DNA from: Octopus sinensis
Lineage: Eukaryota
Assembly: GCF_006345805.1 (NCBI RefSeq)
Contig: NC_043004.1
Location: 38,316,001 to 38,380,000 of the forward strand
Direction of reading: 5' to 3'
DNA length: 64,000 bases
Each line of letters begins with the position of its first letter. Position 1 is the first letter of the stretch. Below the pieces are notes generated by a model. It was given only the letters and a program-made list of their open reading frames with translations. It had not been told where the DNA came from and made no database searches. Shown here piece by piece: positions 13,051 to 61,230 of this stretch. The translations under genes were made by a program, and so were the position numbers.

Positions 13051-13979
13051 TATTATTATTATTATTATTTATGGTTTCTTTTCATTATAACTTTATTTCA
13101 GCTGCCTTAGTACCGGGCATCCTCCGAAGGCCAAGAGTAGCAAGGGCACTTTTGTTTTGCTATGTATGCTAAAATTATCACCACATTTATTCCATTTTAG
13201 ATGGAGTGTGCTTTCCGTAGTATATGGGCTGTACCCATCAGGGAGATTGAAGTTACCAGGGAGTTGCTTAATATGCTTGTATTGGGAAGTTCCAAACGAT
13301 AGTGACGCCCTCGCCATTTACTACATCCTCTGGATGGTGCCTATACCACTTATCATGGAATTTAATTTTGTAGTATTTGCAAGCATTCCAGTGGATGTAC
13401 TGCCCTAATCTATCATGTCTTATGAGGTACTCCCTTTCAGCGAGGACTGGGCAGCCCGAAACAACATGATCAATTGTCTCGGTGAATTTTCCGCAAATTC
13501 TGCATAAGGGGTCAGATCCATTTTTAAGGACGTTTGCATGGTAGTTTCTGGTAGGTAAGCTCTGATCTTGCGCTGCAGTAACAAAACCTCCTGTTTACCC
13601 TTTCTCACCTGTCCCTTGTAGCCAGTGATGTGTTAGGATCTGGCTTGGACAGGCGGTTAGGGTATTCTCCATGCAGGAATTTGCCTTTCCAGTTGTCTTC
13701 GATATTATTCATGTAAGCCTTCTTTGCGTTTTGTTTGATGTTCTTTGCATCAGTGATGGGTTTGTCACTAATTGGATCTCATTGGTCTTTCTAAATATTA
13801 ATTTCTAAATCAGGTCTGTCAGTATTTAGGTGTCTTTGGTCATTCTTATTGTTAACTTGTAGGTCAAGAGACTTTTTAAATTTCTTACTAAGCTTCATGA
13901 CTGAAGCTTGCTTGGAATCTTCATGCATCAGGGCAGTTCGCAAGAGCACATCACTTGTTGTATTAAGGTACGTTTCAAG
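12762..13979 (-). mobile_element. R4/Dong-clade LINE 3' fragment, internally deleted, with duplicated 3' end
   Basis: The minus strand translates as CRICGKFTETIDHVVSGCPVLAEREYLIRHDRLGQYIHWNACKYY..KWYRHHP..VWNFP and then jumps to SLMGTAHILRK. The last ~230 bp is present twice (12762-12990 and 13068-13295), each copy ending in (AAT)n. Confidence 0.8.
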
Positions 13980-14323
13980 GTATAGATGCATCCATGGATC
14001 ATTGTTCTGCCAATGTAGCTTTCAACAGATTGGAACATATATGTTGTGGTTCATCAAACCTCACTAGAATATCAATATATGACGTTTACTGCGGGGCAGC
14101 TAGAATGAATATAATCAAGGATCTTTGCTGCGATTGTGTTGTAAAAGCAATTTCTGATACTTTTCCAACAGGATCTAATCTCATACCAGGCAGGTATGCT
14201 TGCTGTGGGAGTACAATTTTCGACACGCGTGCTCGAACCTGTTTCAACAAACAAATATATTCACCACTGAATGTTGTGCCATGGTGGCCGATGTATCATC
14301 ATCATCACCACCATCCTCACTGA
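13980..14323 (+). pseudogene. Galaxin-like exon 2, 5'-truncated copy A
   Basis: The open frame reads GIDASMDHCSANVAFNRLEHICCG...CC...[22 protein letters not shown]...VVPWWPMYHHHHHHPH*. It is collinear with 29199-29553, and the 3' UTR and AATAAA signals (14343, 14366) are also homologous. Its 5' end abuts the Dong fragment. Confidence 0.8.
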
Positions 14324-14506: not shown

Positions 14507-14603
<97 letters not shown>

Positions 14604-14646: not shown

Positions 14647-14679
<33 letters not shown>

Positions 14680-15479: not shown

Positions 15480-18459
15480 GTAGTAGTTTATTTGATGAGA
15501 AACATATGGATGATCTAAAAGAAGACAATAAAACTAATGGTGACATGGCAGAAGAAGAAAATGCAATCTACGACAGAATAATGGCAAGACTACAGGAGAA
15601 AGATAGCGACATTATTTGCAACCTTAAAAAGTTGATCGACGGAAATTAAACCAAGAAAGGAAAAATGTCAATGAAATTCTGAAATACATCAGAACAAACA
15701 ACATCACAGAAACAAATAATTTGATCAAAGCAGCAAGGATTGTTATAGCAGAAAACGTGGGTGTTGATGTCAAGAAAAAGAAACATAATGGGAGTGACAT
15801 GGTGGAAAAGAAGAATCCAGGCAGGGTTAGACAATCTCTCGAATGAAATCTGTGTTAGACCGAAAAGAGAAAGGTGAGCTTAAAAGCGAGTAAAAATACA
15901 GGGCGAAAGTAGTAGTGGAGGAACTGAAACAGCGCCTCATTACAAAGAAAGCAAAGCTGGTAAGATACGACCAAAGAATGAAAGGTTACCACCAGAATAG
16001 GTTATTCAGAGTAGATCGAAAGATATTCTATAAAGAAATGAATGGAGAGTGTACAGATGAAAAGTTGATACCAGATAACATTGAAAGTCAAAGGTTTCGG
16101 AGTGACATCTGGAGCAAAGATAAGGAGCACAAGAAGGATGCTAAATGGTTGCAAGAAATGGAACAAACAGTAGCCAGTCCAAAACAGGCAAAACTAGTAA
16201 TTTCAGTAAGGAAAGTGAAGGAAATCAGAAAAAAATGGGCAAATGGAAGGCCCAGGGACCAGATGGAGTTCAAGGCTACTGGATCAATAGATTTGGTGAA
16301 TGCCATGCACGAATAGCTGCACAACTCAAAACTCTGTTAAATGCCGACCAAGTAACACCAGAGTGGTTGACATTGGGTAGGAAAGTGCTGTGCCTGAAAA
16401 ACATCGAAAAAGGCAATACAGTAGACAATTACAGGCCGATATCCTGTTTGACAGTTATGTGGAAGTTATTGACTGGAATAGTCGCAGAGTCAATGTACGA
16501 ACACCTGTAAAAAAAACTGGAATCCTGCCACATGAGCGGAAGATTTGCAAGCGTAAGTTCAGAGGTACCAAGGATCAACTCCTGATTGACAAAACTGTAC
16601 TTAGAGACTGCAAGAGGAGGAAAAGTAAATTAGCCATGTCATGGATCGACTATCGTAAGGCGTACAATATGATCCCACATTCTTGGATTATGGAGTGTAT
16701 GGACCTATTTGGTAGTGCATCAAATGTTGAGCGCTTGCTTGGAAAAAGTATAGCGAATTGGAGGATGGACCTGACAGCATACGGATGAAGTTAAGGCACA
16801 GTAGAAATTAGGAGGGGCATCTTCCAGAGGGACTGCTTGTACTCACTGATCTTTGTATTGTGCTTGATACCACTAACACTGATTTTGAGGAAAGCAAAAG
16901 CTAGTTATGTATTCAAAAACCGCCAACTACAAATCAACCATTTGTTATTCATGGATTACCTCAAACTTTATGATAGAGATGAAACCCAAGTCAGCTCCCT
17001 CGTTGATACGGTGTATACCTTCAGTGCTGATATCAGAATGGAGTTCGGACTGAGAAAGTGTGGTGTGTTGAAGAGACGCAAAATCAAATGTATGGACAGG
17101 CTAACGATACCGTCGGGGAGGTTATGAAGCAGATCGAAGAGACGGGCAATAAGTACTTTGGGATTTTAGAAATGGATAAATTAATGGAGAAAGAAATGAC
17201 AGAGAAAAATGGAGTACTTGCGCAGACTGAGTCGAAATTAAACGGAGGGAATAAGATCGAAGCTATCAACACCTGGGCGGTTTCACTCTTTAGATATGAA
17301 GCATGGGTAATCGCATGGACACTATACGAACTAAACAGCTTAGACAGAAAGACAAGGAAGTTGCTGACTAGGTATGGGTCACTCCACCCCAAAAGTGACA
17401 CAAACAGACTGTATGTACCAAGAAAAAGAAGAGGAAGAGGACTTGTTGGATGCGAACACAGCATTAGAGCAGAAGAAAACAACATAACATAATATGTAAA
17501 AAATATGCCACAGAACCACTATTATTAGAAGTAGGAAGGTCAAGCTTTTGTAGGATGAAAGATTGCAAAGAGAAAGCACTATACAAGAAACTGAAAACGA
17601 ATGAAACTGAAAATAGGTGGGCAAAGAAAAGAGTGCATAGACAACTTCATAGGGATGGTGAAGATAAGACAGACAGAGAAAAGAGATGGCTGTGGATGAC
17701 TAAAAGTGATTTAAAACCGGAAACAGAGGCTCTAATCTGTGCTGCCCAAAAGCAAGCACTAAGAACAAACTACATAAAATACAGAATAGATAACATAGCC
17801 GAAAGTAATAAGTGCAGAATCTGTGGACAAAACTATGAAACCGTATGGCATAATACCAGCCAATATACGCCACTAGCCCAGAAGGAATATAAGAGACGCC
17901 ACGACAATATAGCCAGGCTTGTCCATTGGACACTTTCCAACAAGTATGGACTTGACAGAGCAAAAAATTGGTACGACCACAAACCTGAAGGCATCTTCGA
18001 AAGTAGAAAGGCAAAAATACAAAGGGATTTTATGATTCAGTGCAACCATGAGGCAGAGAATAGGAAGCTGGATATAGTCTTAATTAAGAAAGAAAACAAA
18101 CTATGCTGGATCATAGATATAGCATGCCCAGCTGACAACAAGGTATGCGATAAGGAAGAAAGAAAAGCCGAGAGACATGACAGGTTAGCTTGGGAGGTAA
18201 AGCAGTTGTGGCCGATGAAAAAGGTAGCAGTAGTATGAATAATTGTCGGAGCCCTGGGAACTGTGAGCAAAAATCTCGAGACGTACCTGGAACAAATAGT
18301 GGCTGCAATAAGGGTGAAGCACTTGCAAAAAACAGCACTGCTTGGAACCGCTCGAATACTCTGGAAGGTGCTCGAAAAATAAGAGGAGCTACCTTAGTTC
18401 ACTGGTAGTGAACAGCTGATACTGTAGTACATCTTCAGCGTTAGAAGCTGTGGAAAGGC

Positions 18460-19009: not shown

Positions 19010-19034
19010 TATTAACAACAGAATAATAATCATG

Positions 19035-19079
<45 letters not shown>

Positions 19080-19203
19080 TATAATGATGATAAAAATAAT
19101 GATAATAATAATAATAATAATAGTATGAATAATAGTAATAAAATAATAATATAATAATAATAATATAATAATAATAGGATGAATAAAAAAAATATAGTTA
19201 TAC

Positions 19204-19239
<36 letters not shown>

Positions 19240-19310
19240 TAAAAATAATAATAATAATAATAATAATAATAATCATAATAATAATAATAATATGATATAA
19301 TAATGATAAA

Positions 19311-19347
<37 letters not shown>

Positions 19348-19464
19348 TAATAGATGAATAATAATAATAATAATATTAATAATAATAATAATAATAATAA
19401 TAGATAATGATAATAATAATGATAAAAATAATAATTAATAATAATAATAATAATAGTATGAATA

Positions 19465-19501
<37 letters not shown>

Positions 19502-19554
19502 TAATAAAATGATAAAATATAATAATAATAATAATAATAATAATAGTATGAATA

Positions 19555-19594
<40 letters not shown>

Positions 19595-19612
19595 TACTAA
19601 TAATGATAAAAA

Positions 19613-19679
<67 letters not shown>

Positions 19680-19694
19680 TTAATAATATAATAC

Positions 19695-19741
<47 letters not shown>

Positions 19742-19860: not shown

Positions 19861-20092
19861 TAAATTATTCTTATCTATCTTGGATGTTATTATTTAATGA
19901 ATGCATTCTTTGTTTTTTCTACAGCATTCCGTGAAATATTCTCATGCACTAAAGTAATGAACAAGATATGCAAGTAAAAATCTGGGAACTTTAGGTTACC
20001 TAGTACTACGTTTTAATTTTTAGGAAGATATATAAAGATTTTTCGCTGCATATCAAAGTGAATCTGGAATCGAGAACAGAATAGGGAACATC
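19861..20092 (+). promoter_or_regulatory. Promoter and 5' UTR of galaxin-like gene B, TATA box at 20029-20036
   Basis: TATATAAA lies about 60 nt upstream of the ATG. The whole block is collinear with 60845-61076 upstream of the paralogous exon 1 (shared gaaatattctca, gaacaagatatg, tttaggtt, gttttaatttt, tatcaaagtgaatctggaat, gggaacatcATG). Confidence 0.7.
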
Positions 20093-20186
20093 ATGTCCAA
20101 CATTGTAATCATCATTGCAGCTGCTCTGCTTGCAGTCTTTGGATCAACAACTGCCTTTCATTGGACATATAATGCTCCTCCACCTA
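20093..20186 (+). CDS. Galaxin-like gene B, exon 1 (signal peptide)
   Basis: MSNIVIIIAAALLAVFGSTTA/FHWTYNAPPP has a hydrophobic core and a T-x-A cleavage site, with ATG context aacatcATG. The donor GTAAGA at 20187 follows 94 nt (phase 1). The paralog at 61077 has the same layout and phase. Confidence 0.8.
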
Positions 20187-20948
20187 GTAAGAAGTTTTCA
20201 CAATTCTATATATTACTTTGTTCCTTTTTTTTAGTGTATATAACAAAAGAAAAGGAAAAAGAAAGTTAGTTTGTAGTTCTTATACATATTCAAAGTTACT
20301 AATATATCGAGATTCAACATCGATATGCTTCTATCGAGATTAAAGTGGTATTGCACTTAGATGCATGGTTTTATATAGCATAACATTAAGTAAAATTCAA
20401 ATCATAGAAATCGTTATTTCACTTTGAATATCACATAAGTATCATTTAGAATGTAAGGTAAGATGAATACACTTTTTGCACCTTAAAGTCGCTGGCGTTT
20501 TATGGCGAGAAAAACAAAAGGTAAAATAAGCAACTGAATTTATTTCTGCCCTGTGAGGTAGATATCATGTGAGTACATGTTTATAAAAATACACCTTTCG
20601 GGTATAAAGAATATTGGAAATAGGTTCATATTTTGTCAAATCCCATATAGAAAATTGCTGATCAGAACTAGGATCAAATATGGTTGTAAGCCTAATTGAA
20701 GTGGGTTAAAGATTGAAACCGAATGTTAGACGACAGTTTTCATTGCTGAAGAAATAAAAATGCGCATACTGGTGCTATAGTTATTACAAAAGTTATGAGA
20801 AAGCAGAAGAAAAAAAAAAACAAGAAATTGCATTTCGGTATTTTGTTACGTCCATTGACGTTCTAAGTTTCTAACCTATACAGGGTGTGTGTTGTTATCA
20901 TATTTACATTTGCTAATAAGAATATGAATCAACTATATATATATATAT

Positions 20949-20980
<32 letters not shown>

Positions 20981-20989
20981 TATATATAT

Positions 20990-21030
<41 letters not shown>

Positions 21031-21186
21031 CAACAATTGAGGGTAAAATTAATTAATTAATTAATCAATTTCACCAGTATTCAGTATGCAAAGGGACCAT
21101 TTAAGGCGAATTCAAATTATTACATTATATAAAAGGGCTTAGTAAAATAATTACGCGGCAAAGTAATTTATTTTACTAAGCCCTTT

Positions 21187-21218
<32 letters not shown>

Positions 21219-21234
21219 CTATATATATATATAT

Positions 21235-21278
<44 letters not shown>

Positions 21279-21297
21279 GTATGTATATATATTTGCG

Positions 21298-21512
21298 CGA
21301 GCTGGCAGAAACGTTAGCACGCTGGGCGAAATGCGTAGCTGTATTTCGTCTGCAGTTACGTTCTGAGTTCAAATTCCGCCGAAGTCGACTTTGCCTTTCA
21401 TCCTTTCGGGGTCGATAAATTAAGTACCAGTTACGCACTGGGGTCGACGTAATCCGTTTGTCTGTCCTAATTTGTCCCCTCTGTGTGTAGCCCCTTGTGG
21501 GTAGTAAAGAAA
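21298..21512 (+). mobile_element. SINE family 1
   Basis: gcgagctggcagaaacgttagcacg...gagttcaaattccgccgaagtcgactttgcctttcatcc...gccccttgtgggtagtaaagaaa. Confidence 0.85.
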
Positions 21513-21923
21513 TATATATATTTGCGCACGTACACGCGCGTGCGTGTATACTTAGATACACACGAGAAGAAATCGCGCTACAAGAAACAAACAGCAACGC
21601 ATAATCTTTGCAACTGGCACATGCTTTTAACTTTTAATTACCATTTACCGTTCTCTTTTTCCTAATCCTGACTATCTGAATTTATATTTGTATGTTCATG
21701 TTAAATTCTATTGATGTTTTGTCGATACATTGATGCATTTGAACGATTGGAAATATGCAGTTATAATATTATTGGAGACTTTTTCGTTTTTTATTGTTTT
21801 CTGTTTTCTGTTTAAATATGGATAAACACTCAGTCTTCTCGTGTTTGCATCTTATGAGTACGATAAATTTATAGCTACAGTTGTTTATGTTGAGAATGTA
21901 GAGTACTGTGAAAGTCTCATTTG

Positions 21924-21984
<61 letters not shown>

Positions 21985-23348
21985 TATATAAGTAAAACTC
22001 AAAGTTTGTTTTCCTGCCCTTTGATTAAGATGATAAAGAATACAAATAAAATAGTCATTTCCTCCCTTTAAGTAAAAAGAATCAAGTTGAAAATATTTAT
22101 TTGCGGAGGTATACATGAAAGAGTCGTCACAGCTACCGCCGTCCGTCCATTTTTCTTTGTTTTTTTTCGTTAATAATATATACAACTTTTGGAATGCCGT
22201 GGACTGCAAGATAGAAATTTGCCCTATATTTTATGAGATATATCTTGGATCCGGGGTACTTGATTTGTTTTCTTAAAGGGTTGTATGTTATAATGAAACT
22301 CTTTAAAGAGCATTCAAATGCCACTGCAGCGTTGAAATCGTTGCCCCAGTGAGGTCAATTAAGCACGTCATCAAGTACACGTTGGGTATGCTGAAGTACC
22401 CGTGTATGTCACTTGGAACAGCAGTAACAAAGAATGGCAGAGAAGAAAGCGAGGAAAAATACTGAAGCCATTTGAACGTTTTCAAAGAGGAAACACTTGG
22501 TTGTGTTTATATCGACACACAAAAGGCAGGGGAACTGTATTATTTAAGAATTTTATTGCATGAAGTTCGAAATTGACTCGAAACGCCAAAAACATTTCCA
22601 TTCGTCTGAAGCATCAAACTAATACACTTGCTTCTTCCCTCACCTGTCTTTGTCTTTTGTTATTTTTAAATTTTGGCTTTAGCAATATTCGAAGCCGTGA
22701 GAAAGTCATTCACTGAATTTTGTCATGGAGAAAATTTGTCACTATAGACAGATTGGTGTAAACACACCAATTCAGTTAGCAGTGATTCTTAACCAAACAG
22801 GCCTTTTTATGGGTTCGAATATGCGTCAAGCATATTGAACTGATAAAAAGTTTGTATTCATAAAGATCACTGCCCAGCGCTTTTATATCATCGAGCAAAT
22901 GTGGGCGGAACTCTTGAAGAGTTGTGGGAGCTCAACCACAGAGAATCGCGTCTCATACCTGTGAATGTGATGACTAATTAGTACGCATCTCTCCCCAGGC
23001 ACATTGAAACGATTATGAGAAACCACCCGAAATATTAACAATGTACAGTAACTTCTTGAAATGAACATTATGTAATAAATTTTCATTATAGACATTTTTA
23101 TTTCAAAACACTTTATCGTTTGGATTATGTGAGTGACCGAACTTTTGCACGGCCATTTTTGGTGGCCGTTTCGTTTATTCTCCTCTCATTCAGAACCCCT
23201 TTTACAAAATGTAATGATTAGGTATGGAAATGACTCCAACAGGACCAATGTTTCATCTGTAAAAAAAATGCAATGCGAGAAATTTAATTATAGGTTGGGA
23301 ATTAGTAGAAATTTACAATAGTTTAAAGTGGCCGATGACTTTTGCTCG

Positions 23349-23400
<52 letters not shown>

Positions 23401-23830
23401 CAAAACAAAAAATGGAACAAGAACGTAACAGGCGACAACAAAACATACGCAGAGTAGGTGATACAATAACGGACAGGAAAAAACAAGGACGGGACATTCG
23501 GAGTTTTCAATCTTCAGTCGAGAAGCAGATCGTCTTTGCAGGTTCGGTCGGTTAATTTTGAGACTGTTCTAATCTGGTCGGCTCCAAGCAAATCTAAGCT
23601 AAGAGCACTAGATTCTTTGGAAGAAAGCAAGAGAATGTATACGAAAACAAGGATGAAAAGCAAAAAACGGAGAAATGGTAAACAAATTCAGACCACAGGA
23701 CATTAACAACAGGTGTCTTTTGACTAAGGACGAATTCATGAATGGTTCATATCATTATTAGTATTCCTTTGTTATTCTTAAATCTAACCAAAATCAATAT
23801 TCTTTTTTGTTATTTTATTTCTGCATTTAG

Positions 23831-24249
23831 ATATTTTTAATCAGGCTTTAAACGCTCTGCTCGCTGTGGAAATGTAGGATTTGGTAGAGAGGCGAAATTT
23901 TGTTGCGCAGGTCCATTACTTCCAAGAACAACCGCAACAAACGGCTGTTGCAGCGCGGAATCGATAGAGACATCAGTTAGCGATTGTTGTAACGGCGCTT
24001 CGATTGCGCGAACGACGCATGTACACTGTGGCACAGCACCAATTCTCAGGGAAACAATATTGGGACGGTCACAATGGATGCACGAAGTTTCTTTGTTGTT
24101 AGGGCACTGTAGCGCATATTCTGGGTAGAAATAATAATATAGCACACATATTTGCTTGCTGTGTATTTTTAATGTTCTGTTACTTTGGGCGCGTGTATCT
24201 ACGACGGAGTTGGGTGCCATGGTGGCAGATGTGGTATCATTTATTTTAA
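23831..24249 (+). pseudogene. Galaxin-like exon 2, diverged intronic copy C (frameshift and stop)
   Basis: The frame from 23841 reads SGFKRSARCGNVGFGREAKFCCAGPLLPRTTATNGCCSAESIETSVSDCCNG...MHEV and aligns residue for residue with [50 protein letters not shown] of exon 2B. After a shift near 24090 it reads CC*GTV...FACCV...SWVPWWQMWYHLF* (TAG at 24100, TAA at 24247). Candidate acceptors are catttag (23830) and ttaatcag (23844). Confidence 0.8.
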
Positions 24250-25566
24250 AACCGGTATCGATTAACAAATTCCATTAGCATGTAAAACATATTTTGTCTG
24301 TTCAATTTTGCTTTGCATAAAATATATACTCTTCTTTTGTATAGTCATTAAACAAGGTTAATATCAGAAAACACTCAAAGACTATATGCCTTGTTGACCC
24401 CGATTTTAGTTTTGGGCATATTTTTCAGAAACTGGATATCATGTATTGTAATCATTCTTTGTAAAAATTGGTTATAGAAATGAACAAAAAGCATTCTGTA
24501 ACTTATTGGTAGATTTGAAAACCAGCGATGGCCTCATTTTTATGTCGTCAATTCAAGCGAAGCATGCTCAGTTCAGCAAATTGTCGAGTAAATACAAATA
24601 TATAGCTATGAACTCTATGGTACATATTCTGAGAGAGATGGTTAGTTAACCTATGGACGAAATCCTTAATTCTCAAACTATGAACCTGTTAGGCAAGTGT
24701 ATAAATGCCTACGAAATATATATTTATTTCATACGATACTTTTCGCGAAAATTTGTAATAGTTTAAAGATTTAATATAAATATACCATAGTTTTGTATGT
24801 ATTTAAAATGAACAGTGACATATAGACTTTATCTCTAATTCAATATTCTGTATGAAAATTCTTCCAATGCCAAGTTACTTTCAGACGAAGATCCGTGTGA
24901 TTAACTTGCTAGAAATAAAGGCTAAATCTTCCCTCAAATTACAGCATACCCTCTTAAAATGAAACATATTAATGTATTCCTAGAAAAGCCTGTTCAGGAA
25001 CATATTATGCTCATGAGCATTGTACTATTTCCAAGACAAGCGATGTCGACTTGATTAGCGTTCGACTCTGACGGTTATGGAAAATAGACGTGTTAATGTG
25101 CAGTTCCAGAGCGTTATAATTGTTGGAGGGAATAATATAGTGTAATGATGGATGATTCATTAACACAATATGGATAAATAGTTGAGAGGATTTTATTGAG
25201 TCTTGACTGCTTGAGTGGAGGTAACCCGAGACCAGTAAACTCCGGGGAGCAAGGACAATAATAGAAGAGGTGGGATAGGGCACAATAAGAGACAGCGACT
25301 CTGTGAATCAGAAGTTATAGTATGCCAAACCCTCTACAAATGACAGCAAATCCGACTTAAATCACAAACTCCTATTTAAATAGAAAACATCGCACATTGT
25401 AATCGAACCAGCAACAGCTTCAACAATTAAACAGCAATGTATTCTACAGGCGAATATTATAGATACACGTATTTTATAGATACATATATTGCCTAGTAGA
25501 GTTATAAAAATTTTGTAGAGTGGAGAGACGCATTAGGTTTTTAAGTTAATCAACTTACATTTAGAT

Positions 25567-27120
25567 CAGGGATGGGCAATTATTCTGGCTCGGACGCCAC
25601 TTTAAGAGAGCCGTGGTTAGCGGAGGGCCGCACCTTCTATAACTGATTATATTCATTAGTTAACATTACATTTCATTGAAGACGAAGTGTAAATTACATA
25701 ATAATAAATAAATAAAACTAAAGCAATGGTGGTACACAGAAAAGGTTCCATTACATTTATTTATGTGCAAATTACATATCAGCCAGCATAAGTAATTTAA
25801 TAATGCGACAAATGTCATACTTATTTACAATTCTTTTGAAATCAGAAGTGAGGTTTTTTGTTGAGATCCTCATCACTGCATGCAAGTTTATGTCAGTCAC
25901 AGAGGATCAATTTTTACTCTTGTTGATTTTTATGCAAGAAAAACTTTGCTCACAAATATATGTGGATCAAAAAATAGAATATATTTCCCCAGCAAGTTTC
26001 TTTACTCACGGAAATTTATCAGTAGACAGAAATTTGTAAAATCCTATCAATATAACAGAACCAAACATTTCTTTAGCGTATGATCTGACTGCATGTCAAT
26101 TAGATCAAGCTGCATCTCCTCTGGTGCTGTATCAATATCAGTAACGAAGGGATAAGATAACAAATTCAAACCATGCCCAGTTTTCTAAAAATCCTGAAAT
26201 CTTCTTGTGACCTCATCCTCCAAGTTCAGCAAATGACCCCTAATCTTGGAAGAAACACTTGCAGGCACTTTCTGTTTTGTTAATAAAGGGAAATAACAAA
26301 CATTGCTCTTATCTGTTTGCCTTGCAACTAGACCTAGTTTTGTTTTGAATGATATCACATGCTTAAATGTTTTATGTAGAAACTACCCATTTCCATACAA
26401 TGTCAAATTCAATTCATTTAATTTCTCAAACATATCAGCTACAAACTTCTCATCTTATATCTCCAATCCATACATCCCATTTTGGTCACAAAATCACATA
26501 GAAGCTCCTTCATGTCCAGAAAGAGGAGGATTTCATTCTGTAATTCCCAAGCCCGTTTTAGCATTTTCCACATGCTCAGCCACCGAATACTGTTGTGGTA
26601 AATCACATCTCCATACTCAGCATCCATATCATCAAGCAGAGATTTAAATTGTCGATGGTAGAGCGTCCATACTCTGACTGAGTTCACCACGCTCACTACA
26701 GGATCCACCACATGCTCTAAGTCCAGTGCGGCTTTACAGAGGCTTTCCTGTTGTAAAATGCAATGAAAAGACAAGATACCACTGTCTGGCCGTTCTGCTT
26801 TTAACTTGTTCTCTAAAAGTTTAATCATACTCGCATTTTTTCCGATAAATGCTCTGACCTCATCTGTTGGAATGCTTACCATTCTATTCCATGACAAGGC
26901 ACTTTTCTCCACACAATCCACAACACATTCAAACAAGGTCTGGCCAGTGGTTGTATTTTTCATCGATTCTAAACCATGTAGTTTATCTGTATTGAAGAAC
27001 TGTTCAGTAACGAAACCCGAATGAAAACAACTTTGATTGTTGTGATAACCTGCAGTGAATGGATTAAACAATAACTCAATCGAAAAAATGTTAAAATTAA
27101 TTAATGCGTCATTAAACACC
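25567..27120 (-). mobile_element. hAT (Charlie/SPIN, GTF2IRD2-like) DNA transposon, 5'-truncated
   Basis: The terminus CAGGGATGGGCAA at 25567 follows an atttagat target-like 8-mer. Minus ORF 26439-27119 has hAT motifs FHCILQQESLC, HRQFKSLL, IYHNSIRWLS and LQNEILLFL. Confidence 0.85.
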
Positions 27121-27819
27121 TGGGATTAATGAAAACTCCTATGGCTGAGCTATAAAGCAACTTTCCCAGCTTAAATAAAGAATATTATCGACAAGTGTTT
27201 AAATATAAAAGAAAAAAAGCAGCTAGCTCTCCACAAGGGAAAACACTTTTCTGTGGCTACTATCACACGGTTATCAAACGAGTTTATTATTATTCCATCA
27301 AACCTAAAGAAACGGGGTCGGAAGAGAAAATATTGGTATCTGACTTGCCACTCTATGCTAGAGGACCAAGTATCAGACATAGTGGACATCATGCGACACT
27401 TCCAGTTCCAACACAACGAGCGTATATGAGTGACAGTAGTGCAGAAAATATTAAAGAGTTGGTACATTGGGAAGCAAACCACTCCAAGGCATTCTAGTGT
27501 ATGGAAGAGGAAAAAACAACGGAGGCCCTAAAAACATTGATATTACGCCTAAAGTTCTTAAAAAATCAACAGATCGCTCACAGCGAGGAAAGATGAGATT
27601 CATCTACATATATCCAGAAAGAGCCTTACGAGAAATCTACTCATGGCTTCCATTTACACCAGCAGCTAGAATTACAATGACCACAAAAAATATTACAAAC
27701 TACATAAACAAACAAAAGCTAAAGACGTGTGTGTATGTATGCGTGTGCGTGTTTGTGTGTGGAAGTATGTGTTTGTGTATATGTGCATGTATGTGTGTTT
27801 GCTGATTAGAACCAATGAG

Positions 27820-28390
27820 AGAAGTAGTGTTGTTGATGAAGGGGCAGGTGTTGCAGTGGGATCTGCAGCACGGGTAGGATCCGGGTGGGGCTGGTGGAAA
27901 GAGGAGAAGGTGCTACGGACCAGAAGATCTCGTAAGTTCCGGGCGCGTGTAAAGGAGGACAAGGGTGAGTTGGGGAAAATTGGGCGGGTAGTAGGATCGA
28001 GCTGGAGGCGATGGAAGGCTCGTAGTGTCCTTCGACGAAGGGGTTGAGTGAAGAGTGGAAAAGGAGGGGAAGGGGTTCGGTTAGTGGGTGGGTGAGGGGA
28101 AGAAGAAACTATGGTGGTGCGATCCATTCGACGAGCGCGGGCAAGTGTGTTTTGGACATAGTTTGAGGTGTATCCTCGATGCCGGAACAGGCGGGCAAGG
28201 TACTGGGATTGAATCTCAAAATCCTGGTCCTGGATGCACAAGCATCGGATGCGGAGGAACTGGGAGTATCGGCTGGCCCGTTTGGTGTGGAAGGGATGGG
28301 AGGAGGAGAAGTTGAGGTAAACGTGAGAATCTGTGGGATTGAAGAAGGCGGAGGCGATGAGAGAGTGGGAGGGATGGTCAATCGTAAGAG
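27820..28390 (-). mobile_element. Penelope-like element fragment (RT C-terminal region)
   Basis: The minus ORF segment reads NPTDSHVYLNFSSSHP..YSQFLRIRCLC..YLARLFRHRGY. It belongs to the same family as 47330-48200. Confidence 0.8.
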
Positions 28391-28393
28391 AGA

Positions 28394-28570
28394 TGGTATT
28401 TCGTCTGCCGTTACGTTCTGAGTTCAAATTCCGCCGAGGTCGACTTTGCCTTTCATCCTTTCGGGGTCGATTAAATAAGTTACGCACTGGGGTCGATGTA
28501 ATCGACTTAACCCGTTTGTCTGTCCTTGTTTGTCCATTTGTGTTTAGCCCCTTTTGGGTAGTAAAGAAAT

Positions 28571-28572
<2 letters not shown>
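28394..28572 (+). mobile_element. SINE family 1
   Basis: gtatttcgtctgccgttacgttctgagttcaaattccgccgaggtcgactttgcc...gtagtaaagaaatag. Confidence 0.85.
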
Positions 28573-28620
<48 letters not shown>

Positions 28621-29009
28621 GTGTGTATATATATATGTGTGTGTGTGTGTAAATATATACACATATATTAATGAATGAGAGTATTGTATTCAAAAAGGCA
28701 GCATTCCAGCAGAATCATTAGGAAGCCGGACAAAATGCTCAGTAACGTTTCCTCAGTTTTTGCAATCTGGTTTCATATTCTACTATGGTCGAATTTCTCT
28801 TTTTCCTTTTCAGTCTCGATAAAATACATACAAGTCAAATGTGTCTATAATAGTAATAATTTTTAAAAATATTTATATGCCTATAATCCTGTATATTCTA
28901 TATTTTTTATATTCATATATAATACTTGTACAATTTTTTATACACATGCATTGTCATTTGTATTTAATATTTAAATTAAATTGATTTTTAATATCTGATT
29001 CATTTTTAG

Positions 29010-29553
29010 AGTATTGCGGTAACCAATTGTACAACCCTCACAATAGCATTTGCTGCCAAGGACAACTGACAGCTATAAGTGGTTTCATGTATCCTGCTTG
29101 TTGTGGAGTTGCAGGATTTGACAGAGATGCCAAAGTATGTTGCAACGGAAATCTCGTTAGTAAATCAGCAGGAGTAAATGGATGTTGCGCTGGGGCAGGT
29201 ATAGATATATCCATCAAAGATTGCTGTCCCAGCGGACCTGTTGACAGAGTGGATTACTTATGTTGTGGTGGGCCAAAATTAGTAGAACATCAATATATGA
29301 CGTTTGCTGCGGGGGAGCTAAAATGAATAAGATGACGGAAGTTTGCTGCAATGGTGTTGTAACATCAATTTCTGATACTTTTCCAACAGGATCTAATCTC
29401 ATACCAGGCAGGTATGCTTGTTGTGGGAGTACAGTTTACGACACTCGTACTCGTACCTGTTTCAACCAGCATTTAAATACACAAAATAATTTGGTGCCAT
29501 GGTGGATGATGAATTATTTTCATCATCCCCCTCATCACCACCATTTTCACTGA
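29010..29553 (+). CDS. Galaxin-like gene B, exon 2 (nine CC repeats, VPWW, His-rich tail), with an apparent 1-nt deletion near 29270-29278
   Basis: The acceptor catttttag at 29009 gives A+AG=Lys in phase with exon 1. The exon reads [15 protein letters not shown]...LCCGGP, shifts frame, then continues [12 protein letters not shown]...[18 protein letters not shown]...[20 protein letters not shown]. Copy A is continuous across the shift. AATAAA signals lie at 29573 and 29596. Confidence 0.8.
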
Positions 29554-29744
29554 TTGGTAACTGATATGACAAAATAAAGTTTTGAAGCATGTAAGAATAA
29601 ACCGCTTGTTTTGTTTGTTTTATATAGAAGACGTATTCAAACATTTCTCTCTTCGCTTTGTCTGTCAGTTTCCGCTCTCTCACTATCTCCATATATATGT
29701 AGATATGTGCATATGTATATATATATATATATGTAGATATGTGC

Positions 29745-29832
<88 letters not shown>

Positions 29833-30150
29833 CATATATAATATACATATATATATATACATATATATATATACATATATAATATATATATATATATACA
29901 TATATATATTACATATATATAACATATATATATACATATATATACATATATATATAAATATATAATTATATACATATATACACACATATATATATATACA
30001 CACATATATATATATACATATATATTACATATATATATATATCATATATACATATATATATATATATATACATACATACAATACATATATACATACATAT
30101 ATATATACATATATATAAACATATACATATATATACATACAAATACATAT

Positions 30151-30218
<68 letters not shown>

Positions 30219-30299
30219 TATACATATATATATATATACATATATTACATATATATACATATACATATATATATACATATATATATATATATATTTTGT

Positions 30300-31275
30300 T
30301 TTTCTTGTTTCAGCTCAGAGCTGCGGCCATGCTGATGCACCGTCGTTTTGTGCTACACTGTTATTACGAAGAACGTCCTCTAATATGTGGCACTTGGTGA
30401 AGAATGGAGTTTGATATAGCTACTCTCATTTGCACCTCTTGCCGTGAGGTAGGTTCATCTGGGACTCTCGACAGGAAGATGTCCAGCTTTGATTTAAAAA
30501 CCTCTACTTTGTGCAAGTTTCTCAGACTCTTTGGGAGAATATTAAAAAGCTGTGGGCCCTTGAAACCCAGGCTGTTGCAGAAGCTGGTCCTGAAGCGTGA
30601 TAGCATTGCTGGGATCTTTGTCACTATGCAGTGTCGTCCCGTTCTAGCATTGGTGTAGCTTACAATGCCAAAATTTGGCACAATTCCTTCCAGGATCTTC
30701 CAGACATATATTACTGCCTACCTCTCCCGTCTTCTCTGCAGGGAGTAGAGATTTAGCTGTTTCAACCTTTCCCAGTAGCTGAGCTGTTGCAAAGGGACGA
30801 TCTTCTTTGTGAATCTTCTCTGGATTGCTTCAAGGTCCGCTGTTAATTTTACACTGGTGGGTGACCATAGCTGTGAACAGTAATCCAGGCGGCTGAAGAC
30901 GAATGTCCGCCAGAGGATCATCATGGTTTCCTTATCTCTGGTTCTGAATGTTCTTAGGATTCATCCAGCCAGTCGTCTGCACTTTGTCGCCATCCTGGTA
31001 ATGTGCACTTCGAAAGAGTTATCATCACTCATGTCGATACCCAGGTCCCTCACAGACTTAGGCTCTGGGATTGAAATTCCGTGTGGACCGGTGTATTCTG
31101 TAAGTTTAATATTCAGTTTTGGATGCTGGTAGCGCAGGGCCTGGAATTTTTCAGCATTAACCTGCATATTATTATCCACAGCCCATCTGTAGATTGAGTC
31201 CAACTCCTGCTGCAGGTGTGCAACATCGCTGGGGTTCTGTATTTTCTGCGAGACTTTCGTATCGTCTGCATAGCT
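30300..31275 (-). mobile_element. CR1/L2-group LINE family A, 5'-truncated
   Basis: Minus-strand pieces read [36 protein letters not shown] and FKGPQLFNILP. The 3' tail at 30304-30342 resembles the SINE family 2 tail. Confidence 0.85.
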
Positions 31276-31320
31276 TATACATACATACATACATACATTC
31301 ATACATACATACATACATAA

Positions 31321-31426
<106 letters not shown>

Positions 31427-31525
31427 AAGCTATGCAGACGATACAAAAGTCTCGCATATATATAGACAGACAGACAGACAGTCAGACAGATAGACAGACA
31501 GACAGATAGACAGATAGATAGATAG

Positions 31526-31575
<50 letters not shown>

Positions 31576-31794
31576 GTAGGTAGGTCTACAGTATTTCAAA
31601 CCCTAGCAGTATATTCAATAACTTTATCCACATAACTACCACCATATCTACTCACTTGTATTCCTCTTACAGTCAACCTTTACCTTGCAGAATTGGTCCC
31701 GCGTAAAGACCTCGGTGTCTAAGTTCAATACCTTTGAGGGTACCAAAAATTCTCTATACCGAGAATATCTGGATCTCATCTGTTTACTGCATAT

Positions 31795-31847
<53 letters not shown>

Positions 31848-32059
31848 ATATATATATGTATATATATATTCATATATGTATAATATGTATGTATATATGT
31901 ATATATATATATATATGTATATATATATACATGTATGTATATATATATACATATATAATATACATATATATATACATATATATATACATATTAATATATA
32001 CATATATATATATACATATATATATACATATATATATATATACATATATATGATTGATT

Positions 32060-33782
32060 GATTCTAGTTTCAGCTTATGAGCTGTGGCCATGCTGGGGCA
32101 CCGCCATTTGGTGTTGCTACTTGATTTCACTTCATGGAGGCTTTCTAGCAACTGCTATTTGGTGCATGAGAGAGTTTGATGCAGCTGCCCTCATCTGCCC
32201 CCCCCTGCCGTGAAGTTGGTTCATCTGGGACACCTGACAGGAAGAGATCCAGCTTCATTTTAAAGACATCTGTATCCACCCCATGCAGGTCTCTCAGGTT
32301 CTTCGGGAGGATATTGAAGAGCTGTGGGCCTCGGAAGCCCAGGCTATCACAGAATCTTGTCCTACATCTTGATGGCAGGTTTGGAGTCCTAGGCACCACG
32401 CAGTGGCGCCCAGTTCTGGCATTTGCGTAACTCTCGATGCCAAAGTTCAGGACACTTCCCTCCAGGATCTTCCAGATGTATATTATGGCATATCTTCCCC
32501 GCCTACGCTCCAGAGAATATAATTTTAATCTCTTGAGTCTTTCCCAGTAGCTTACATTCTGCATAGAGGCTATCTTCTTTGTGTAGCTTCGTTGGATCGC
32601 CTCAAGTTCTGTGATCAACTTGACACTGGATGGTGACCATAGCTGAGAGCAATAGTCAAAGTGGCTTAGGACAAGTGTCTTCCAGAGGACCATCATGGTT
32701 TTTTGTTCTCTTGTTCTAAAGGTTCTAAGAATCCATCCAGCCAGCCGTCTACATTTCATTGTCAGTTTAGCAACATGTACATGAAAGGTCGCGTCATCAC
32801 TCATGTGAATACCCAGGTCACGCACTGATTGTGCCTCTGGGATTGCAATCCTCCGGGTCCAGTGTATTCATTGGGTATTGCATTCAGTTTTGCATGCTGA
32901 TAGTATAAAGCTTGAAACTTTCCAGCATTGAACTGCATGCTATTCTTTTCAGCCCACTTGTATATTTCGTCCAGCTCACATTGCAGGTGTTTAGTGTCCT
33001 CAGGGTTTTGTATTGCCTGTGAAACGTTTGTATCATCTGCATAACTTGTGATCGTGGCTCTCTGCGTGGCTGAGGGCATGTCTGAGAGAGCCATTATGAA
33101 CAGTAGTGGTCCCAGAACAGTGCCTGCGGAACACCGCTCACTATTTGTGTGTTAATGGAGGTGGCCCCATTGGCTACTACCACCTGACTTCTATCCTTCA
33201 GAAAGTCATGAAGCCATTCTCCCAGTTTCCAACTATGTTGAGATCACGCAGTTTGTGACATATCATTCCATGATCGACTTTATCAAAGGCCTTTGCAAAG
33301 TCGAGATATATCACTTCCACATTTGAGTGGTTGAGCAGCCGTTTCAGCACCCAGTCATAGTGTTGTAGGAGCTGAGTTAAACAGCTTCTCCTGGTCGGAA
33401 ACCATGTGGGTGTCGGGCAGCAAGTCATTCTCTTCAAGGAAGGTGATCAGCTTCCTTCTGACTATTCGTTCCATGACCTTGCTGATGTGTGAGGTCAGAG
33501 AGATAGGTCTATAGTTCTTGGCTTCCGCTCTGCTACCTCCTTTATGAATGGGGCATATTTTACCTTCCTTCAGTTTTCCTGGAAGTTTGCCAGCTGCAAG
33601 GAAGCTCTGAAAGAGGAACTGCAGTGGTCTTGCTAGGACTCTCTTACATGCTTTTAGGAGGATTGCCGGGAATCCATCGGGGCCAGTAGCTGAGTCTGTT
33701 TTCATTTCATCTATAGCCTTGGTTACATCGTCTTCCTTTATATCGATGTAATCTATCGTCGCCGCCTCTGATTTTATATCTG
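32060..33782 (-). mobile_element. CR1/L2-group LINE family B, copy 1
   Basis: RT motifs are [33 protein letters not shown] and SYADDT, with the C-terminal region in ORF 32145-32825. Several 1-nt frameshifts are present. Confidence 0.9.
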
Positions 33783-34104
33783 CAGATATATATATATATG
33801 TATATATATATATATGAATATATATATGTATATATATATTATATATATGTATATATATATGTATATATATATATGTATATATATATATGTATATATATAT
33901 ATATGTATATATATGTATATATATATATATATAATATATATATATATATATGTATATATATATGTATATATAATGTATATATATATATATGTATATATAT
34001 ATTATATGTATGTATAAGCTATGCAGACGATACAAAAGTCTCGCATATATATAGACAGACAGACAGACAGACAGTCAGACAGATAGACAGACAGACAGAT
34101 AGAC

Positions 34105-34459: not shown

Positions 34460-34659
34460 GTATATATATATATTCATATATGTATAATATGTATGTATAT
34501 ATGTATATATATATGTATAATATATATATACATGTATGTATATATATATACATATATATATATACATATATATATACATATATATATACATATTATATAT
34601 ACATATATATATATAATATATATATACATATATATATATATACATATATATGATTGATT

Positions 34660-61076: not shown

Positions 61077-61230
61077 ATGTCTAAAATTTTAATCACCATT
61101 GCAACTGCTCTGCTTGCAGTCATTGGATCAACAACCGCCTACAGTTATCCACCATATTATGGTCCACCAGCAGCTCACTATCCTCCACCAACAACTCACT
61201 ATTCTCCACCATATTTTCGTCAATCAACTT
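61077..61230 (+). CDS. Galaxin-like gene D, exon 1 (signal peptide and Tyr/Pro/His repeats), exon 2 presumed beyond the window
   Basis: MSKILITIATALLAVIGSTTA/YSYPPYYGPPAAHYPPPTTHYSPPYFRQST spans 154 nt and is followed by GTAAGT at 61231 (phase 1). The downstream intron is collinear with that of gene B. Confidence 0.75.

What the first reader, a model, noticed from the sequence alone, without database searches (positions are those of the whole stretch)
20093..29553. Hidden two-exon gene for a secreted galaxin-like protein with nine dicysteine repeats and a His-rich tail, in a tandem cluster
Seen: exon 1 (signal peptide, phase-1 GT donor) joins exon 2 (phase-1 AG acceptor) across an 8,823-nt TE-filled intron. 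With one base restored the product is about 212 aa: signal peptide, short Pro-rich linker, 20 Cys (nine CC plus two single flanking Cys) spaced mostly 11 or 13-14 residues apart, then VPWW and a poly-His tail. Five homologous exon pieces occur in the window (exon 1 twice, exon 2 three times), all on the + strand. Established: CC-repeat galaxins are known from coral skeletal matrix, and galaxin-like proteins from the squid Euprymna light organ are implicated in bacterial control. Inference: this is an expanded, fast-evolving cephalopod family of secreted disulfide-rich proteins. I do not recall the VPWW plus poly-His architecture being described, but could not check.
Basis: partly seen in the sequence, partly recalled or inferred. 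Interest (0 to 1): 0.85.

Follow-up and report, generated by a model that had tools for sequence, protein, structure and literature searches.

The report
Frameshifted octopus galaxin gene in cluster
This is the Octopus sinensis copy of a two-exon gene, already annotated in another octopus, for a secreted cysteine-rich galaxin protein; here it carries a one-base frameshift, and it belongs to a tandem gene family that evolves unusually fast.

Summary
Exon 1 (20093-20186, GT donor) and exon 2 (29010-29553, AG acceptor) join in phase 1 across an 8,823-nt intron. The product is about 212 aa: signal peptide, 20 Cys (nine CC), PWW and a His-rich tail. One base is missing near 29273-29284.

The window is Octopus sinensis chromosome CM016866.1:38316001-38380000. 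The gene matches Pfam Galaxin_repeat (75.6 bits). It is the syntenic ortholog of O. bimaculoides 'galaxin' XP_014767985.1, which has the same exon structure and the same dead exon-2 copy inside the intron. No O. sinensis protein exists for it in the database, although three downstream cluster genes are annotated. So it is 'hidden', most likely because of the frameshift. That frameshift is either a very recent pseudogenisation or an A4 homopolymer assembly error.

The family is known. Ten Euprymna galaxins have been described, with antimicrobial repeat peptides, and the octopus galaxins are already in a published tree.

New here:
- The coding exon diverges about 3x faster (d 0.31) than its intron, 3' UTR and the dead exon copy (0.09-0.15).
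- A recent paralog pair has dN/dS 3.2.
- The PWW motif is nearly invariant, while the His tail varies from 0 to 9 residues.
- The octopus proteins are near neutral at pH 7.4, unlike the squid proteins.

Verdict: a new member of a known kind, of moderate interest.

The parts
20028..20036 (+). TATA box (ATATATAAA), 57 nt upstream of the ATG, followed by a conserved short 5' UTR
   Evidence: Invariant in all 7 aligned exon-1 upstream regions from O. sinensis and O. bimaculoides.
20093..20186 (+). Exon 1 coding part: signal peptide MSNIVIIIAAALLAVFGSTTA plus the short linker FHWTYNAPPP and the first base of a split codon (phase 1)
   Evidence: It is 77% identical to residues 1-30 of P0001. The GTAAG donor at 20187 is conserved in all copies.
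20187..29009 (+). Intron, 8,823 nt, GT...AG
   Evidence: It is collinear with the 17.5-kb intron of the O. bimaculoides ortholog at 86-90% identity. Mismatch p = 0.087 over 6,508 aligned nt.
21297..21514 (.). SINE-like repeat copy inside the intron
   Evidence: 14 related copies elsewhere in the window.
23841..24250 (+). Dead exon-2 copy inside the intron. It lacks the 5' part, has stops and frameshifts, and still ends in VPWW
   Evidence: The same dead copy lies at the orthologous place in O. bimaculoides (L001 14967-15433). It diverges at the neutral rate (p <= 0.135).
28381..28589 (.). SINE-like repeat copy inside the intron
   Evidence: 13 related copies elsewhere in the window.
29010..29553 (+). 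Exon 2 coding part: all 20 Cys (nine CC), PWW, His-rich tail and TGA stop
29273..29284 (+). Stretch in which one base is missing (frameshift). It contains an A4 run at 29275-29278
   Evidence: There is a one-column gap against the ortholog and the paralogs read in one frame.
29573..29601 (+). Two AATAAA polyadenylation signals (29573-29578, 29596-29601) in a 3' UTR conserved with O. bimaculoides and with the paralog at 14.3 kb
   Evidence: 3' UTR d about 0.10.
13979..14323 (+). Truncated exon-2 copy of an upstream family member. Only the 3' 114 codons remain, two Cys are lost, and it ends in VVPWWPMYHHHHHHPH*. Likely a pseudogene fragment
61077..61230 (+). Exon 1 of the next cluster gene (annotated O. 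sinensis galaxin-2-like XP_029640236.1, P0161). Its exon 2 lies about 14.5 kb downstream, outside the window

Best explanation
Shown:
- The window is Octopus sinensis chromosome CM016866.1:38316001-38380000.
- Positions 20093-29553 hold the O. sinensis ortholog of O. bimaculoides 'galaxin' (XP_014767985.1). It is the first gene seen of a tandem array of short galaxin genes: this gene, then XP_029640236.1, then XP_029639690.2, then XP_036361252.1/253.1.
- Each gene has a TATA promoter. Exon 1 encodes the signal peptide and a variable Pro/Tyr/His linker. A long phase-1 intron follows, then one exon for the whole mature protein.
- The assembled copy has a one-base deletion at 29273-29284. No protein is annotated for it.
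- The coding exon diverges about three times faster than its own intron, its 3' UTR and the dead exon copy. A recent paralog pair in the cluster has dN/dS 3.2.

Predicted:
- The mature protein is a rod-like stack of 11 short beta-hairpins, one per CC or terminal Cys. The 20 Cys presumably form 10 disulfides that staple neighbouring hairpins.
- It ends in a PWW turn or short helix and a disordered His-rich tail of variable length.

Inferred:
- The family is a secreted host-microbe effector set under diversifying selection. It probably acts at epithelial or mucosal surfaces as antimicrobial or microbe-binding proteins, like the Euprymna galaxins.
- The Trp-Trp/His tail would add charge at acidic pH (net about 0 at pH 7.4, +9 at pH 5.5) or bind metal.
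- This copy was under selection until very recently. It is now either a young pseudogene or intact in the animal and mis-assembled at an A4 run. I rate the two about equal.
For: Identity of the window: 12,924 of 12,924 nt are identical to L005 of GCA_006345805.1.

Family: Pfam Galaxin_repeat E = 4.4e-21, 75.6 bits. The best database hits are O. bimaculoides galaxin (59% identity, E = 1e-77) and galaxin-2.

Orthology: the window is collinear with L001 on both sides of both exons, including the dead exon copy.

Splice: the NCBI model of P0001 joins the orthologous exons. The donor, the TATA box and the 5' UTR are conserved in 7 copies.

Constraint until recently: all 20 Cys align with those of 7 intact relatives. 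There is only one lesion in 638 nt. The truncated copy at 14 kb has already lost 2 Cys.

Fold: AlphaFold2 of the ortholog gives pLDDT > 90 for 157 residues and 22 four-residue strands in 11 hairpins.

Fast evolution:
- Exon 2 d = 0.31, with dN 0.31 and dS 0.34.
- The comparators are intron 0.09-0.11, 3' UTR 0.10 and the dead exon p <= 0.135.
- Fisher tests give 7e-22 for nonsynonymous sites against intron and 2e-6 for live against dead exon.
- P0160 against P0161 gives dN 0.162, dS 0.050, omega 3.2, p = 0.004.

Function by analogy: ten EsGal genes are expressed in epithelia of the light organ and accessory nidamental gland, and EsGal1R3 and EsGal2R4 peptides inhibit bacteria (PMC12773714).

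Against: - No expression data were available. No transcript-derived protein for this gene is in the database, so the splice and any activity rest on orthology.
- The reading frame is broken as assembled.
- Octopuses lack the two symbiotic organs in which squid galaxins act (my knowledge).
- The octopus proteins are far less cationic (+0.4 to +5 at pH 7.4) than EsGal (+5 to +21.5). The antimicrobial analogy is therefore weaker than family membership suggests.
- dS of the window gene is also raised (4-fold sites 7/38 = 0.18 against intron 0.087). Positive selection on protein alone does not explain that.
- The signal peptide was judged by hydrophobicity and conservation, not by a dedicated predictor.
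Confidence: 0.75

Rival explanations
1. This copy is a true, recently dead pseudogene. The one-base deletion is real. At most it yields a truncated 137-aa product with 13 Cys, which is unlikely to fold. The cluster is in birth-and-death turnover.
For: - The frame is broken in the assembly.
- The window already holds two clearly dead family pieces, at 13979-14323 and 23841-24250.
- NCBI annotated proteins for the three downstream genes but not for this one.
- No protein from any transcript assembly matches it.
Against: - There is only one lesion.
- All 20 Cys and every conserved motif are kept.
- The split codon has changed at two positions (T|AT to A|AG) without passing through T|AG.
- The possible site of the deletion includes an A4 homopolymer, a typical long-read error site. 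From memory, the assembly is PacBio-based.
Confidence: 0.45
2. The threefold excess divergence of exon 2 is not due to selection. In one species the coding part was overwritten by gene conversion from a diverged paralog, so the two exons compared are not strictly orthologous.
For: - Synonymous divergence is raised too (dS 0.34; 4-fold sites 0.18 against 0.087).
- The exon distance between 'orthologs' (0.31) equals that between the galaxin and galaxin-2 paralogs (0.31-0.36), whose neutral flanks differ by about 0.27.
- The family is tandem, which favours conversion.
Against: - High divergence starts at the first codon after the acceptor and stops at the stop codon. The last 100 nt of intron and the 3' UTR are about 90-95% identical. 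A conversion tract bounded exactly by the coding sequence would be a coincidence.
- No sampled paralog is closer to the window exon than P0001.
- An independent pair in the cluster has omega 3.2.
- The second ortholog pair also has dN 0.22 above its intron 0.14.
Confidence: 0.25
3. The protein is a structural or matrix component rather than an antimicrobial. Possible sites are cuticle, sucker lining, beak or radula, egg case or stylet. The disulfide-stapled rod would be a building block and the Tyr/Pro/His-rich ends would be cross-linking or metal-coordination sites, as in coral skeletal galaxin and His-rich cephalopod hard-tissue proteins.
For: - The founding galaxin is a coral skeletal matrix protein, and mollusc galaxins are proposed to act in shell formation (PMC12773714).
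- The octopus proteins are near neutral, not cationic.
- The termini are rich in Tyr, Pro and His.
Against: - omega >= 1 together with a conserved signal peptide and conserved introns is more typical of immune, venom or reproductive effectors.
- The His tail is absent in one annotated paralog (P0003 stops right after PWW).
- The functionally studied cephalopod relatives are epithelial antimicrobials.
Confidence: 0.2
4. The family is a salivary-gland (venom) or reproductive secretion. Its fast evolution would then come from prey or predator interactions, or from sexual conflict, rather than from microbes.
For: The layout is the classic pattern of venom peptide and reproductive protein families:
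- a tandem array;
- a conserved signal exon, introns and UTRs;
- a hypervariable mature exon with a fixed Cys framework;
- omega > 1.
Against: No literature hit links galaxins to cephalopod venom or gametes. The closest studied relatives act on bacteria.
Confidence: 0.1

Closest known systems
Octopus bimaculoides 'galaxin' XP_014767985.1 (P0001) and 'galaxin-2' XP_014786332.2 (P0002)
   Same: - P0001 is the syntenic ortholog. It has the same two exons, the same phase-1 junction and the same dead exon copy in the intron.
- It has a near-identical signal peptide.
- It has 20 aligned Cys, the PWW motif and a His tail.

   Different: - It is only 59% identical in protein, although the introns are about 90% identical.
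- The window copy has a frameshift.
- The window copy has a longer tail ([10 protein letters not shown] against HHHHH) and a different split codon (Lys against Tyr).
Octopus sinensis cluster neighbours: galaxin-2-like XP_029640236.1 (P0161), galaxin-like XP_029639690.2 (P0160), galaxin-2-like X1/X2 XP_036361252.1/253.1 (P0159/P0003)
   Same: - They lie on the same chromosome arm and strand and have the same gene layout.
- They share the same promoter motif and the same Cys framework.
- Exon 1 of P0161 is inside the window at 61077-61230.

   Different: - They are 44-51% identical to the window product.
- They are intact and annotated.
- Their tails range from none (P0003) to 9 His (P0161).
- P0161 has PFW instead of PWW.
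Euprymna scolopes galaxins EsGal1-10 (Heath-Heckman et al. 2014, cited but not held in the library; PMC12773714)
   Same: - They are cephalopod secreted proteins with tandem dicysteine repeats.
- AlphaFold predicts beta-rich repeats.
- They form an expanded multigene family.
- A published tree places the octopus galaxins next to EsGal subclades.

   Different: - By sequence they are distant. An exhaustive HMMER search found only one 50%-identity cluster with E < 1e-30, and that cluster is octopus.
- EsGal proteins are strongly cationic (+5 to +21.5), whereas the octopus proteins are +0.4 to +5.
- EsGal genes are expressed in the light organ and accessory nidamental gland, which octopuses lack.
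- None of the 19 non-octopus hit sequences I read out of the 150 listed has a PWW + His tail.
Coral skeletal galaxin (Galaxea fascicularis) and Pfam PF24748 Galaxin-like repeats
   Same: They share the CC-x(11-14) repeat unit with Gly after CC and an aromatic-Asp turn. The Pfam match is well above the threshold.
   Different: - Coral and bivalve members are longer (about 280-1,400 aa).
- They lack the PWW/His ending.
- They are linked to biomineral matrices.
- Octopus has no calcified shell.
Conserved-flank, hypervariable-exon secreted peptide families (for example cone-snail peptide superfamilies and viperid phospholipase A2 genes; from memory)
   Same: - The signal sequence, introns and UTRs are conserved.
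- The mature-peptide exon diverges faster than the introns.
- The Cys framework is fixed.
- The genes are tandemly duplicated.
- omega is >= 1.
   Different: There is no sequence or fold relation. This is a resemblance in evolutionary mode only, not membership.

Membership tests
Galaxin / Pfam PF24748 Galaxin-like repeats | Profile match above the curated gathering score | tested here: met
   75.6 bits against a cut-off of 28, E = 4.4e-21, residues 34-183 on profile positions 4-129 of 131.
Galaxin / Pfam PF24748 Galaxin-like repeats | Tandem repeats with regularly spaced Cys-Cys dipeptides | tested here: met
   Nine CC pairs at start-to-start spacings of 13-16 residues (one of 25), plus two single flanking Cys.
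Galaxin / Pfam PF24748 Galaxin-like repeats | N-terminal signal peptide, secreted protein | tested here: met
   The 11-residue hydrophobicity mean is up to 3.4 over residues 1-15, followed by a small-residue motif (S-T-T-A). The motif is conserved in 7 family members. No dedicated signal-peptide predictor was available.
Coral-type skeletal galaxin | Presence in a calcified organic matrix | not testable with these tools
   This needs proteomics. Octopus has no calcified shell (my knowledge).
Octopus short galaxins (the P0001/P0002/P0003/P0159-P0161 clade) | Two coding exons joined in phase 1, with the signal peptide on exon 1 and the whole repeat domain on exon 2 | tested here: met
Octopus short galaxins (the P0001/P0002/P0003/P0159-P0161 clade) | 20 Cys in fixed register, the motifs [13 protein letters not shown] and TFPTGxN, and a C-terminal P-W-W | tested here: met
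   Alignment A3. PWW is present in 7 of 8 sequences that reach the C-terminus; P0161 has PFW.
Octopus short galaxins (the P0001/P0002/P0003/P0159-P0161 clade) | Uninterrupted reading frame | tested here: not met
   One base is missing at 29273-29284 in this assembly. Whether this is real or an assembly error could not be tested.
Euprymna-type antimicrobial galaxins (EsGal) | Strong net positive charge (+5 to +21.5 at pH 7.4; PMC12773714) | tested here: not met
   The window product is +0.4 at pH 7.4 and +9.0 at pH 5.5. The other octopus members are +1.4 to +5.1 at pH 7.4.
Euprymna-type antimicrobial galaxins (EsGal) | Expression in epithelia that face bacteria, and growth inhibition by repeat peptides | not testable with these tools
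   No expression data or assay were available here. No octopus galaxin study was found.

The most novel reading that the evidence does not exclude
Octopus short galaxins may be a lineage-specific arms-race effector family. Their single mature-protein exon turns over about three times faster than neutral DNA at both replacement and silent sites. That hints at exon-focused diversification by selection plus patchy conversion or mutation, as in cone-snail peptide genes. The Trp-Trp/His-rich ending would act as a pH- or metal-gated switch that arms an otherwise neutral disulfide-stapled rod against microbes, in an animal with no symbiotic organs.
Probability: 0.2. Interest if true: 0.55.

Novelty: new member of a known kind. 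Interest (0 to 1): 0.33.

Why it matters
This adds an unannotated, possibly broken member to the octopus galaxin cluster. The cluster itself is conserved between O. sinensis and O. bimaculoides.

Galaxins are emerging as cephalopod regulators of bacteria. Octopuses have the genes but not the symbiotic organs, so where and how the octopus proteins act is an open and testable question.

The contrast between the fast coding exon and the slow intron and dead exon gives a clean internal control for adaptive evolution. The predicted hairpin-stack fold has no solved relative. None of this overturns current views.

Tried and rejected
1. A protein search with the 51-aa product of the exon at 61077 found nothing, although the identical annotated protein P0161 turned up later. 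This is a word-index miss, not absence.
2. An exact look-up of the 97-aa post-frameshift ORF (29260-29553) in public assemblies, meant to see whether independent assemblies carry the same frameshift, found nothing on record. It is uninformative.
I predicted the ortholog P0001 instead.
4. The Foldseek search against PDB (best E = 3.5) and the profile search of PDB sequences (no hit at E <= 1) found no structural relative.
5. Pfam scans of six ORFs that lie in or reach into the intron (21151-21597, 21769-22209, 26439-27119, 27693-28664) or lie near it (14352-14948, 17058-17492) gave no hit. 'TE-filled' is therefore not shown.
6. The tRNA and Rfam scans of the window found nothing.
7. I tested whether silent changes cluster next to replacement changes, which would be a sign of multi-nucleotide events. 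They do not (6 of 15, permutation p = 0.82).
8. I considered that exon 1 might splice to the exon-2 copy at 23.8 kb. I rejected this because that copy has stops and frameshifts, has lost its first ~30 codons, and its O. bimaculoides counterpart is skipped by the NCBI model.
9. Heath-Heckman 2014 and the supplements of PMC12773714 are not held. EsGal sequences could therefore not be checked directly for a PWW/His ending.

Full report
**1. What is in the sequence**

The claimed anatomy is correct.
- The ATG at 20093 opens a 94-nt coding stretch that ends at 20186, before GTAAGA.
- TTTTTAG ends at 29009 and the second coding stretch runs from 29010 to the TGA at 29551-29553.
- The intron is 8,823 nt and the junction is phase 1.

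The joined frame breaks once. Alignment with the O. bimaculoides ortholog and with paralogs that read in a single frame shows one missing base. The two frames overlap between 29273 and 29284. The conserved [10 protein letters not shown] motif follows directly.

Bridged, the product is 212 aa.
- It has 20 Cys: nine CC pairs separated by 11-14 residues (one gap of 23), plus one single Cys at each end.
- The C-terminus reads [19 protein letters not shown].

tblastn finds exactly five family pieces in the window, all on the + strand.
- Exon 1 is at 20093 and 61077.
- Exon 2 is at 29010-29553, at 13979-14323 (3' 114 codons only, two Cys lost) and at 23841-24250 (degenerate, inside the intron).

**2. 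Where the window comes from and what the gene is**

Pfam Galaxin_repeat (PF24748) matches at 75.6 bits against a cut-off of 28, E = 4e-21. The best database hits are O. bimaculoides 'galaxin' XP_014767985.1 (P0001, 59% identity) and 'galaxin-2' (P0002).

A profile search then recovered four O. sinensis proteins. One of them, XP_029640236.1 (P0161), begins with exactly the peptide encoded at 61077. Its locus L005 is 100% identical to window 51077-64000 over 12,924 nt. The window is therefore Octopus sinensis GCA_006345805.1, CM016866.1:38316001-38380000.

The window is collinear with the O. bimaculoides galaxin locus L001.
- The upstream region, exon 1, most of the intron, exon 2 and the 3' UTR all line up.
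- The dead exon-2 copy also lines up (window 23844-24223 with L001 15018-15416).
- The region around 61 kb is collinear with the start of the O. bimaculoides galaxin-2 gene.

The NCBI model of P0001 joins the orthologous exon 1 and exon 2 and skips the dead copy. This is the best available support for the 20186|29010 junction.

Seven exon-1 regions from both species share several features.
- An invariant ATATATAAA box lies 57 nt upstream of the ATG.
- They share a conserved short 5' UTR and the signal peptide.
- They share the GTAAG donor.

No O. sinensis protein corresponding to this gene exists in the 5.8-billion-protein collection, while its three downstream neighbours are annotated. The gene is indeed 'hidden', most simply because of the frameshift.

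**3. Is this copy alive?**

Arguments for recent or continuing function:
- There is only one lesion in 638 coding nt.
- All 20 Cys and all family motifs are retained.
- The split codon differs from all relatives at two positions (A|AG Lys against T|AT Tyr). The T|AG combination would be a stop.

By contrast, the 14-kb fragment has lost its 5' half and two Cys, and the 24-kb copy is riddled with stops.

The interval that can hold the missing base includes an A4 run (29275-29278). From memory, this assembly is PacBio-based, so a homopolymer undercall is plausible. I could not test this; one search was uninformative. I rate a young pseudogene and an assembly error about equally.

**4. Predicted protein**

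AlphaFold2 on the ortholog, using the family alignment, gives pLDDT > 90 for 157 residues.
- Residues 34-192 form 22 four-residue strands in 11 hairpins. A CC or terminal Cys closes the first strand of each hairpin.
- One longer loop ([10 protein letters not shown]) lies before the last CC.
- A short helix covers PWWQT, followed by a disordered His tail.

Ten inter-hairpin disulfides are inferred, not shown. There is no fold or sequence relative in the PDB.

The mature octopus proteins are near neutral at pH 7.4 (+0.4 for the window product, up to +5.1) and gain 4-10 charges at pH 5.5 (reaching +8.5 to +12.7), most in the His-rich members.

PWW is present in 7 of 8 sequences; P0161 has PFW. 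The His tail varies from 0 His (P0003 has a stop right after WW) to 9 His.

**5. Evolutionary mode**

Window gene against its O. bimaculoides ortholog:

| Region | Divergence |
|---|---|
| Intron | p = 0.087 over 6,508 nt |
| Last 360 nt of intron | d = 0.11 |
| 3' UTR | d = 0.10 |
| Dead exon copy | p <= 0.135 |
| Live exon 2 | d = 0.31 (dN 0.31, dS 0.34) |

- Replacement sites exceed the intron rate (Fisher 7e-22).
- The live exon exceeds the dead exon (Fisher 2e-6).
- High divergence starts at the first codon and stops at the stop codon.
- Silent sites are also raised (4-fold sites 7/38) and do not cluster next to replacements. Exon-limited conversion from an unsampled paralog therefore remains a rival.

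Other pairs in the cluster:
- The recent O. sinensis paralogs P0160 and P0161 have dN 0.162, dS 0.050 and omega 3.2 (p = 0.004).
- The second ortholog pair, P0160 against P0002, has dN 0.22 against an intron d of 0.14.
- Deep comparisons give omega below 1 (as low as 0.2-0.5 against P0159), as expected once the variable sites saturate around a fixed Cys framework.

**6. Comparison with what is known**

Galaxins were defined in coral skeleton. In Euprymna scolopes, ten galaxins are among the most specific transcripts of the light organ and accessory nidamental gland. EsGal1R3 and EsGal2R4 peptides inhibit bacteria. The same paper places the two O. bimaculoides galaxins next to EsGal subclades (PMC12773714). 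The family is thus known and named.

By exhaustive HMMER, the octopus short galaxins form a single 50%-identity cluster. The next hits are long cnidarian and bivalve galaxins at E >= 6e-29. None of the 19 non-octopus hit sequences I read has a PWW/His ending. I found no paper on octopus galaxin expression, on the tail or on selection.

**7. Most likely mechanism**

I think the most likely reading is a secreted, disulfide-stapled hairpin rod with these properties:
- It is made by epithelia.
- Its exposed loop residues diversify under pressure from microbes.
- Its Trp-Trp/His ending adds membrane affinity and charge at low pH, or binds metal.

Only the family, the gene structure, the predicted fold and the evolutionary rates are shown. 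Secretion is strongly implied. The target and the role of the tail are inferred by analogy with the squid proteins. They are weakened by the low charge and by the absence of symbiotic organs in octopus. Structural, venom and reproductive roles remain open.

**8. Verdict**

This is an unannotated, frameshifted member of an annotated, partly characterised family. Interest is moderate: a clean case of a coding exon evolving faster than its introns, and an undescribed variable PWW/His ending.

Noticed in passing
window 51077-64000 = L005 1-12924: The window is 100% identical to Octopus sinensis GCA_006345805.1 chromosome CM016866.1, which places it at 38316001-38380000.
   Followed up: yes
L004 28078-28599 and L005 24683-25231 (O. 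sinensis, downstream of the window): The two annotated neighbours XP_029639690.2 and XP_029640236.1 differ by about 45 replacement codons and one silent codon in exon 2. dN is 0.162, dS is 0.050 and omega is 3.2 (Fisher p = 0.004).
   Followed up: partly
window 20186 / 29010-29011: The split codon is A|AG (Lys) here, but T|AT (Tyr) in the four relatives whose junction sequence on both sides was read (exon 1 ends in T in all six other copies aligned). The mixed state T|AG would be a stop, so both sides changed without breaking the frame.
   Followed up: partly
L002 10001-77249 (O. bimaculoides): The O. bimaculoides galaxin-2 gene spans 67 kb and has two alternative first exons (10001 and 48848), a dead exon-2 copy (56526-56807) and one live exon 2 (76713). 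The exon 2 that O. sinensis XP_029640236.1 uses seems to have no counterpart there. The dead-exon-plus-intron block is shared by the galaxin and galaxin-2 introns at about 77-79% identity, so it predates their duplication.
   Followed up: partly
window 14-664 (+), 37483-39324 (-), 43089-44242 (+), 30961-31599 (-): These are retroelement ORFs in the intergenic parts. Reverse transcriptase (RVT_1) E-values are 3e-28, 1.5e-29 and 1e-20, with a weak hit (2e-4, 21.4 bits, below the curated cut-off of 29.6) for the ORF at 30961-31599. There are also RNase H domains (RT_RNaseH_2, 7e-24).
   Followed up: partly
window 4246-4710, 5505-6349, 21297-21514, 28381-28589, 46607-46968 and others: These are SINE-like element copies; the two copies in the intron are about 210-220 nt, and each has 13-14 related copies in the rest of the window, some in tandem. 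ARAGORN and Rfam do not recognise a tRNA head.
   Followed up: partly
window 32012-33785 and 34613-36393: This is a local tandem duplication with a period of about 2.6 kb. Both units match the same O. sinensis segment (L003 41370-43085, reverse) at 91-93%.
   Followed up: no
window 19022-19738, 58042-59360, 29691-30294, 36394-37054: There are very long microsatellites: (AAT)n 717 nt just upstream of the gene, (AAC)n 1.3 kb upstream of the next gene, and (AT)n 600-660 nt. The (AT)n at 29691 starts 140 nt after the stop codon.
   Followed up: no
window 61077-61230: A word-index protein search with this 51-aa exon product found nothing, although the identical annotated protein is in the same database. 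A negative from that tool on short, Pro-rich queries is not evidence of absence.
   Followed up: yes
L003 43722-43727 (O. sinensis XP_036361253.1): This paralog has a TAG immediately after PWW, where its neighbour XP_036361252.1 (P0159) and O. bimaculoides galaxin and galaxin-2 have Gln. It lacks the His tail entirely, so the tail is dispensable or this isoform is also decaying.
   Followed up: no
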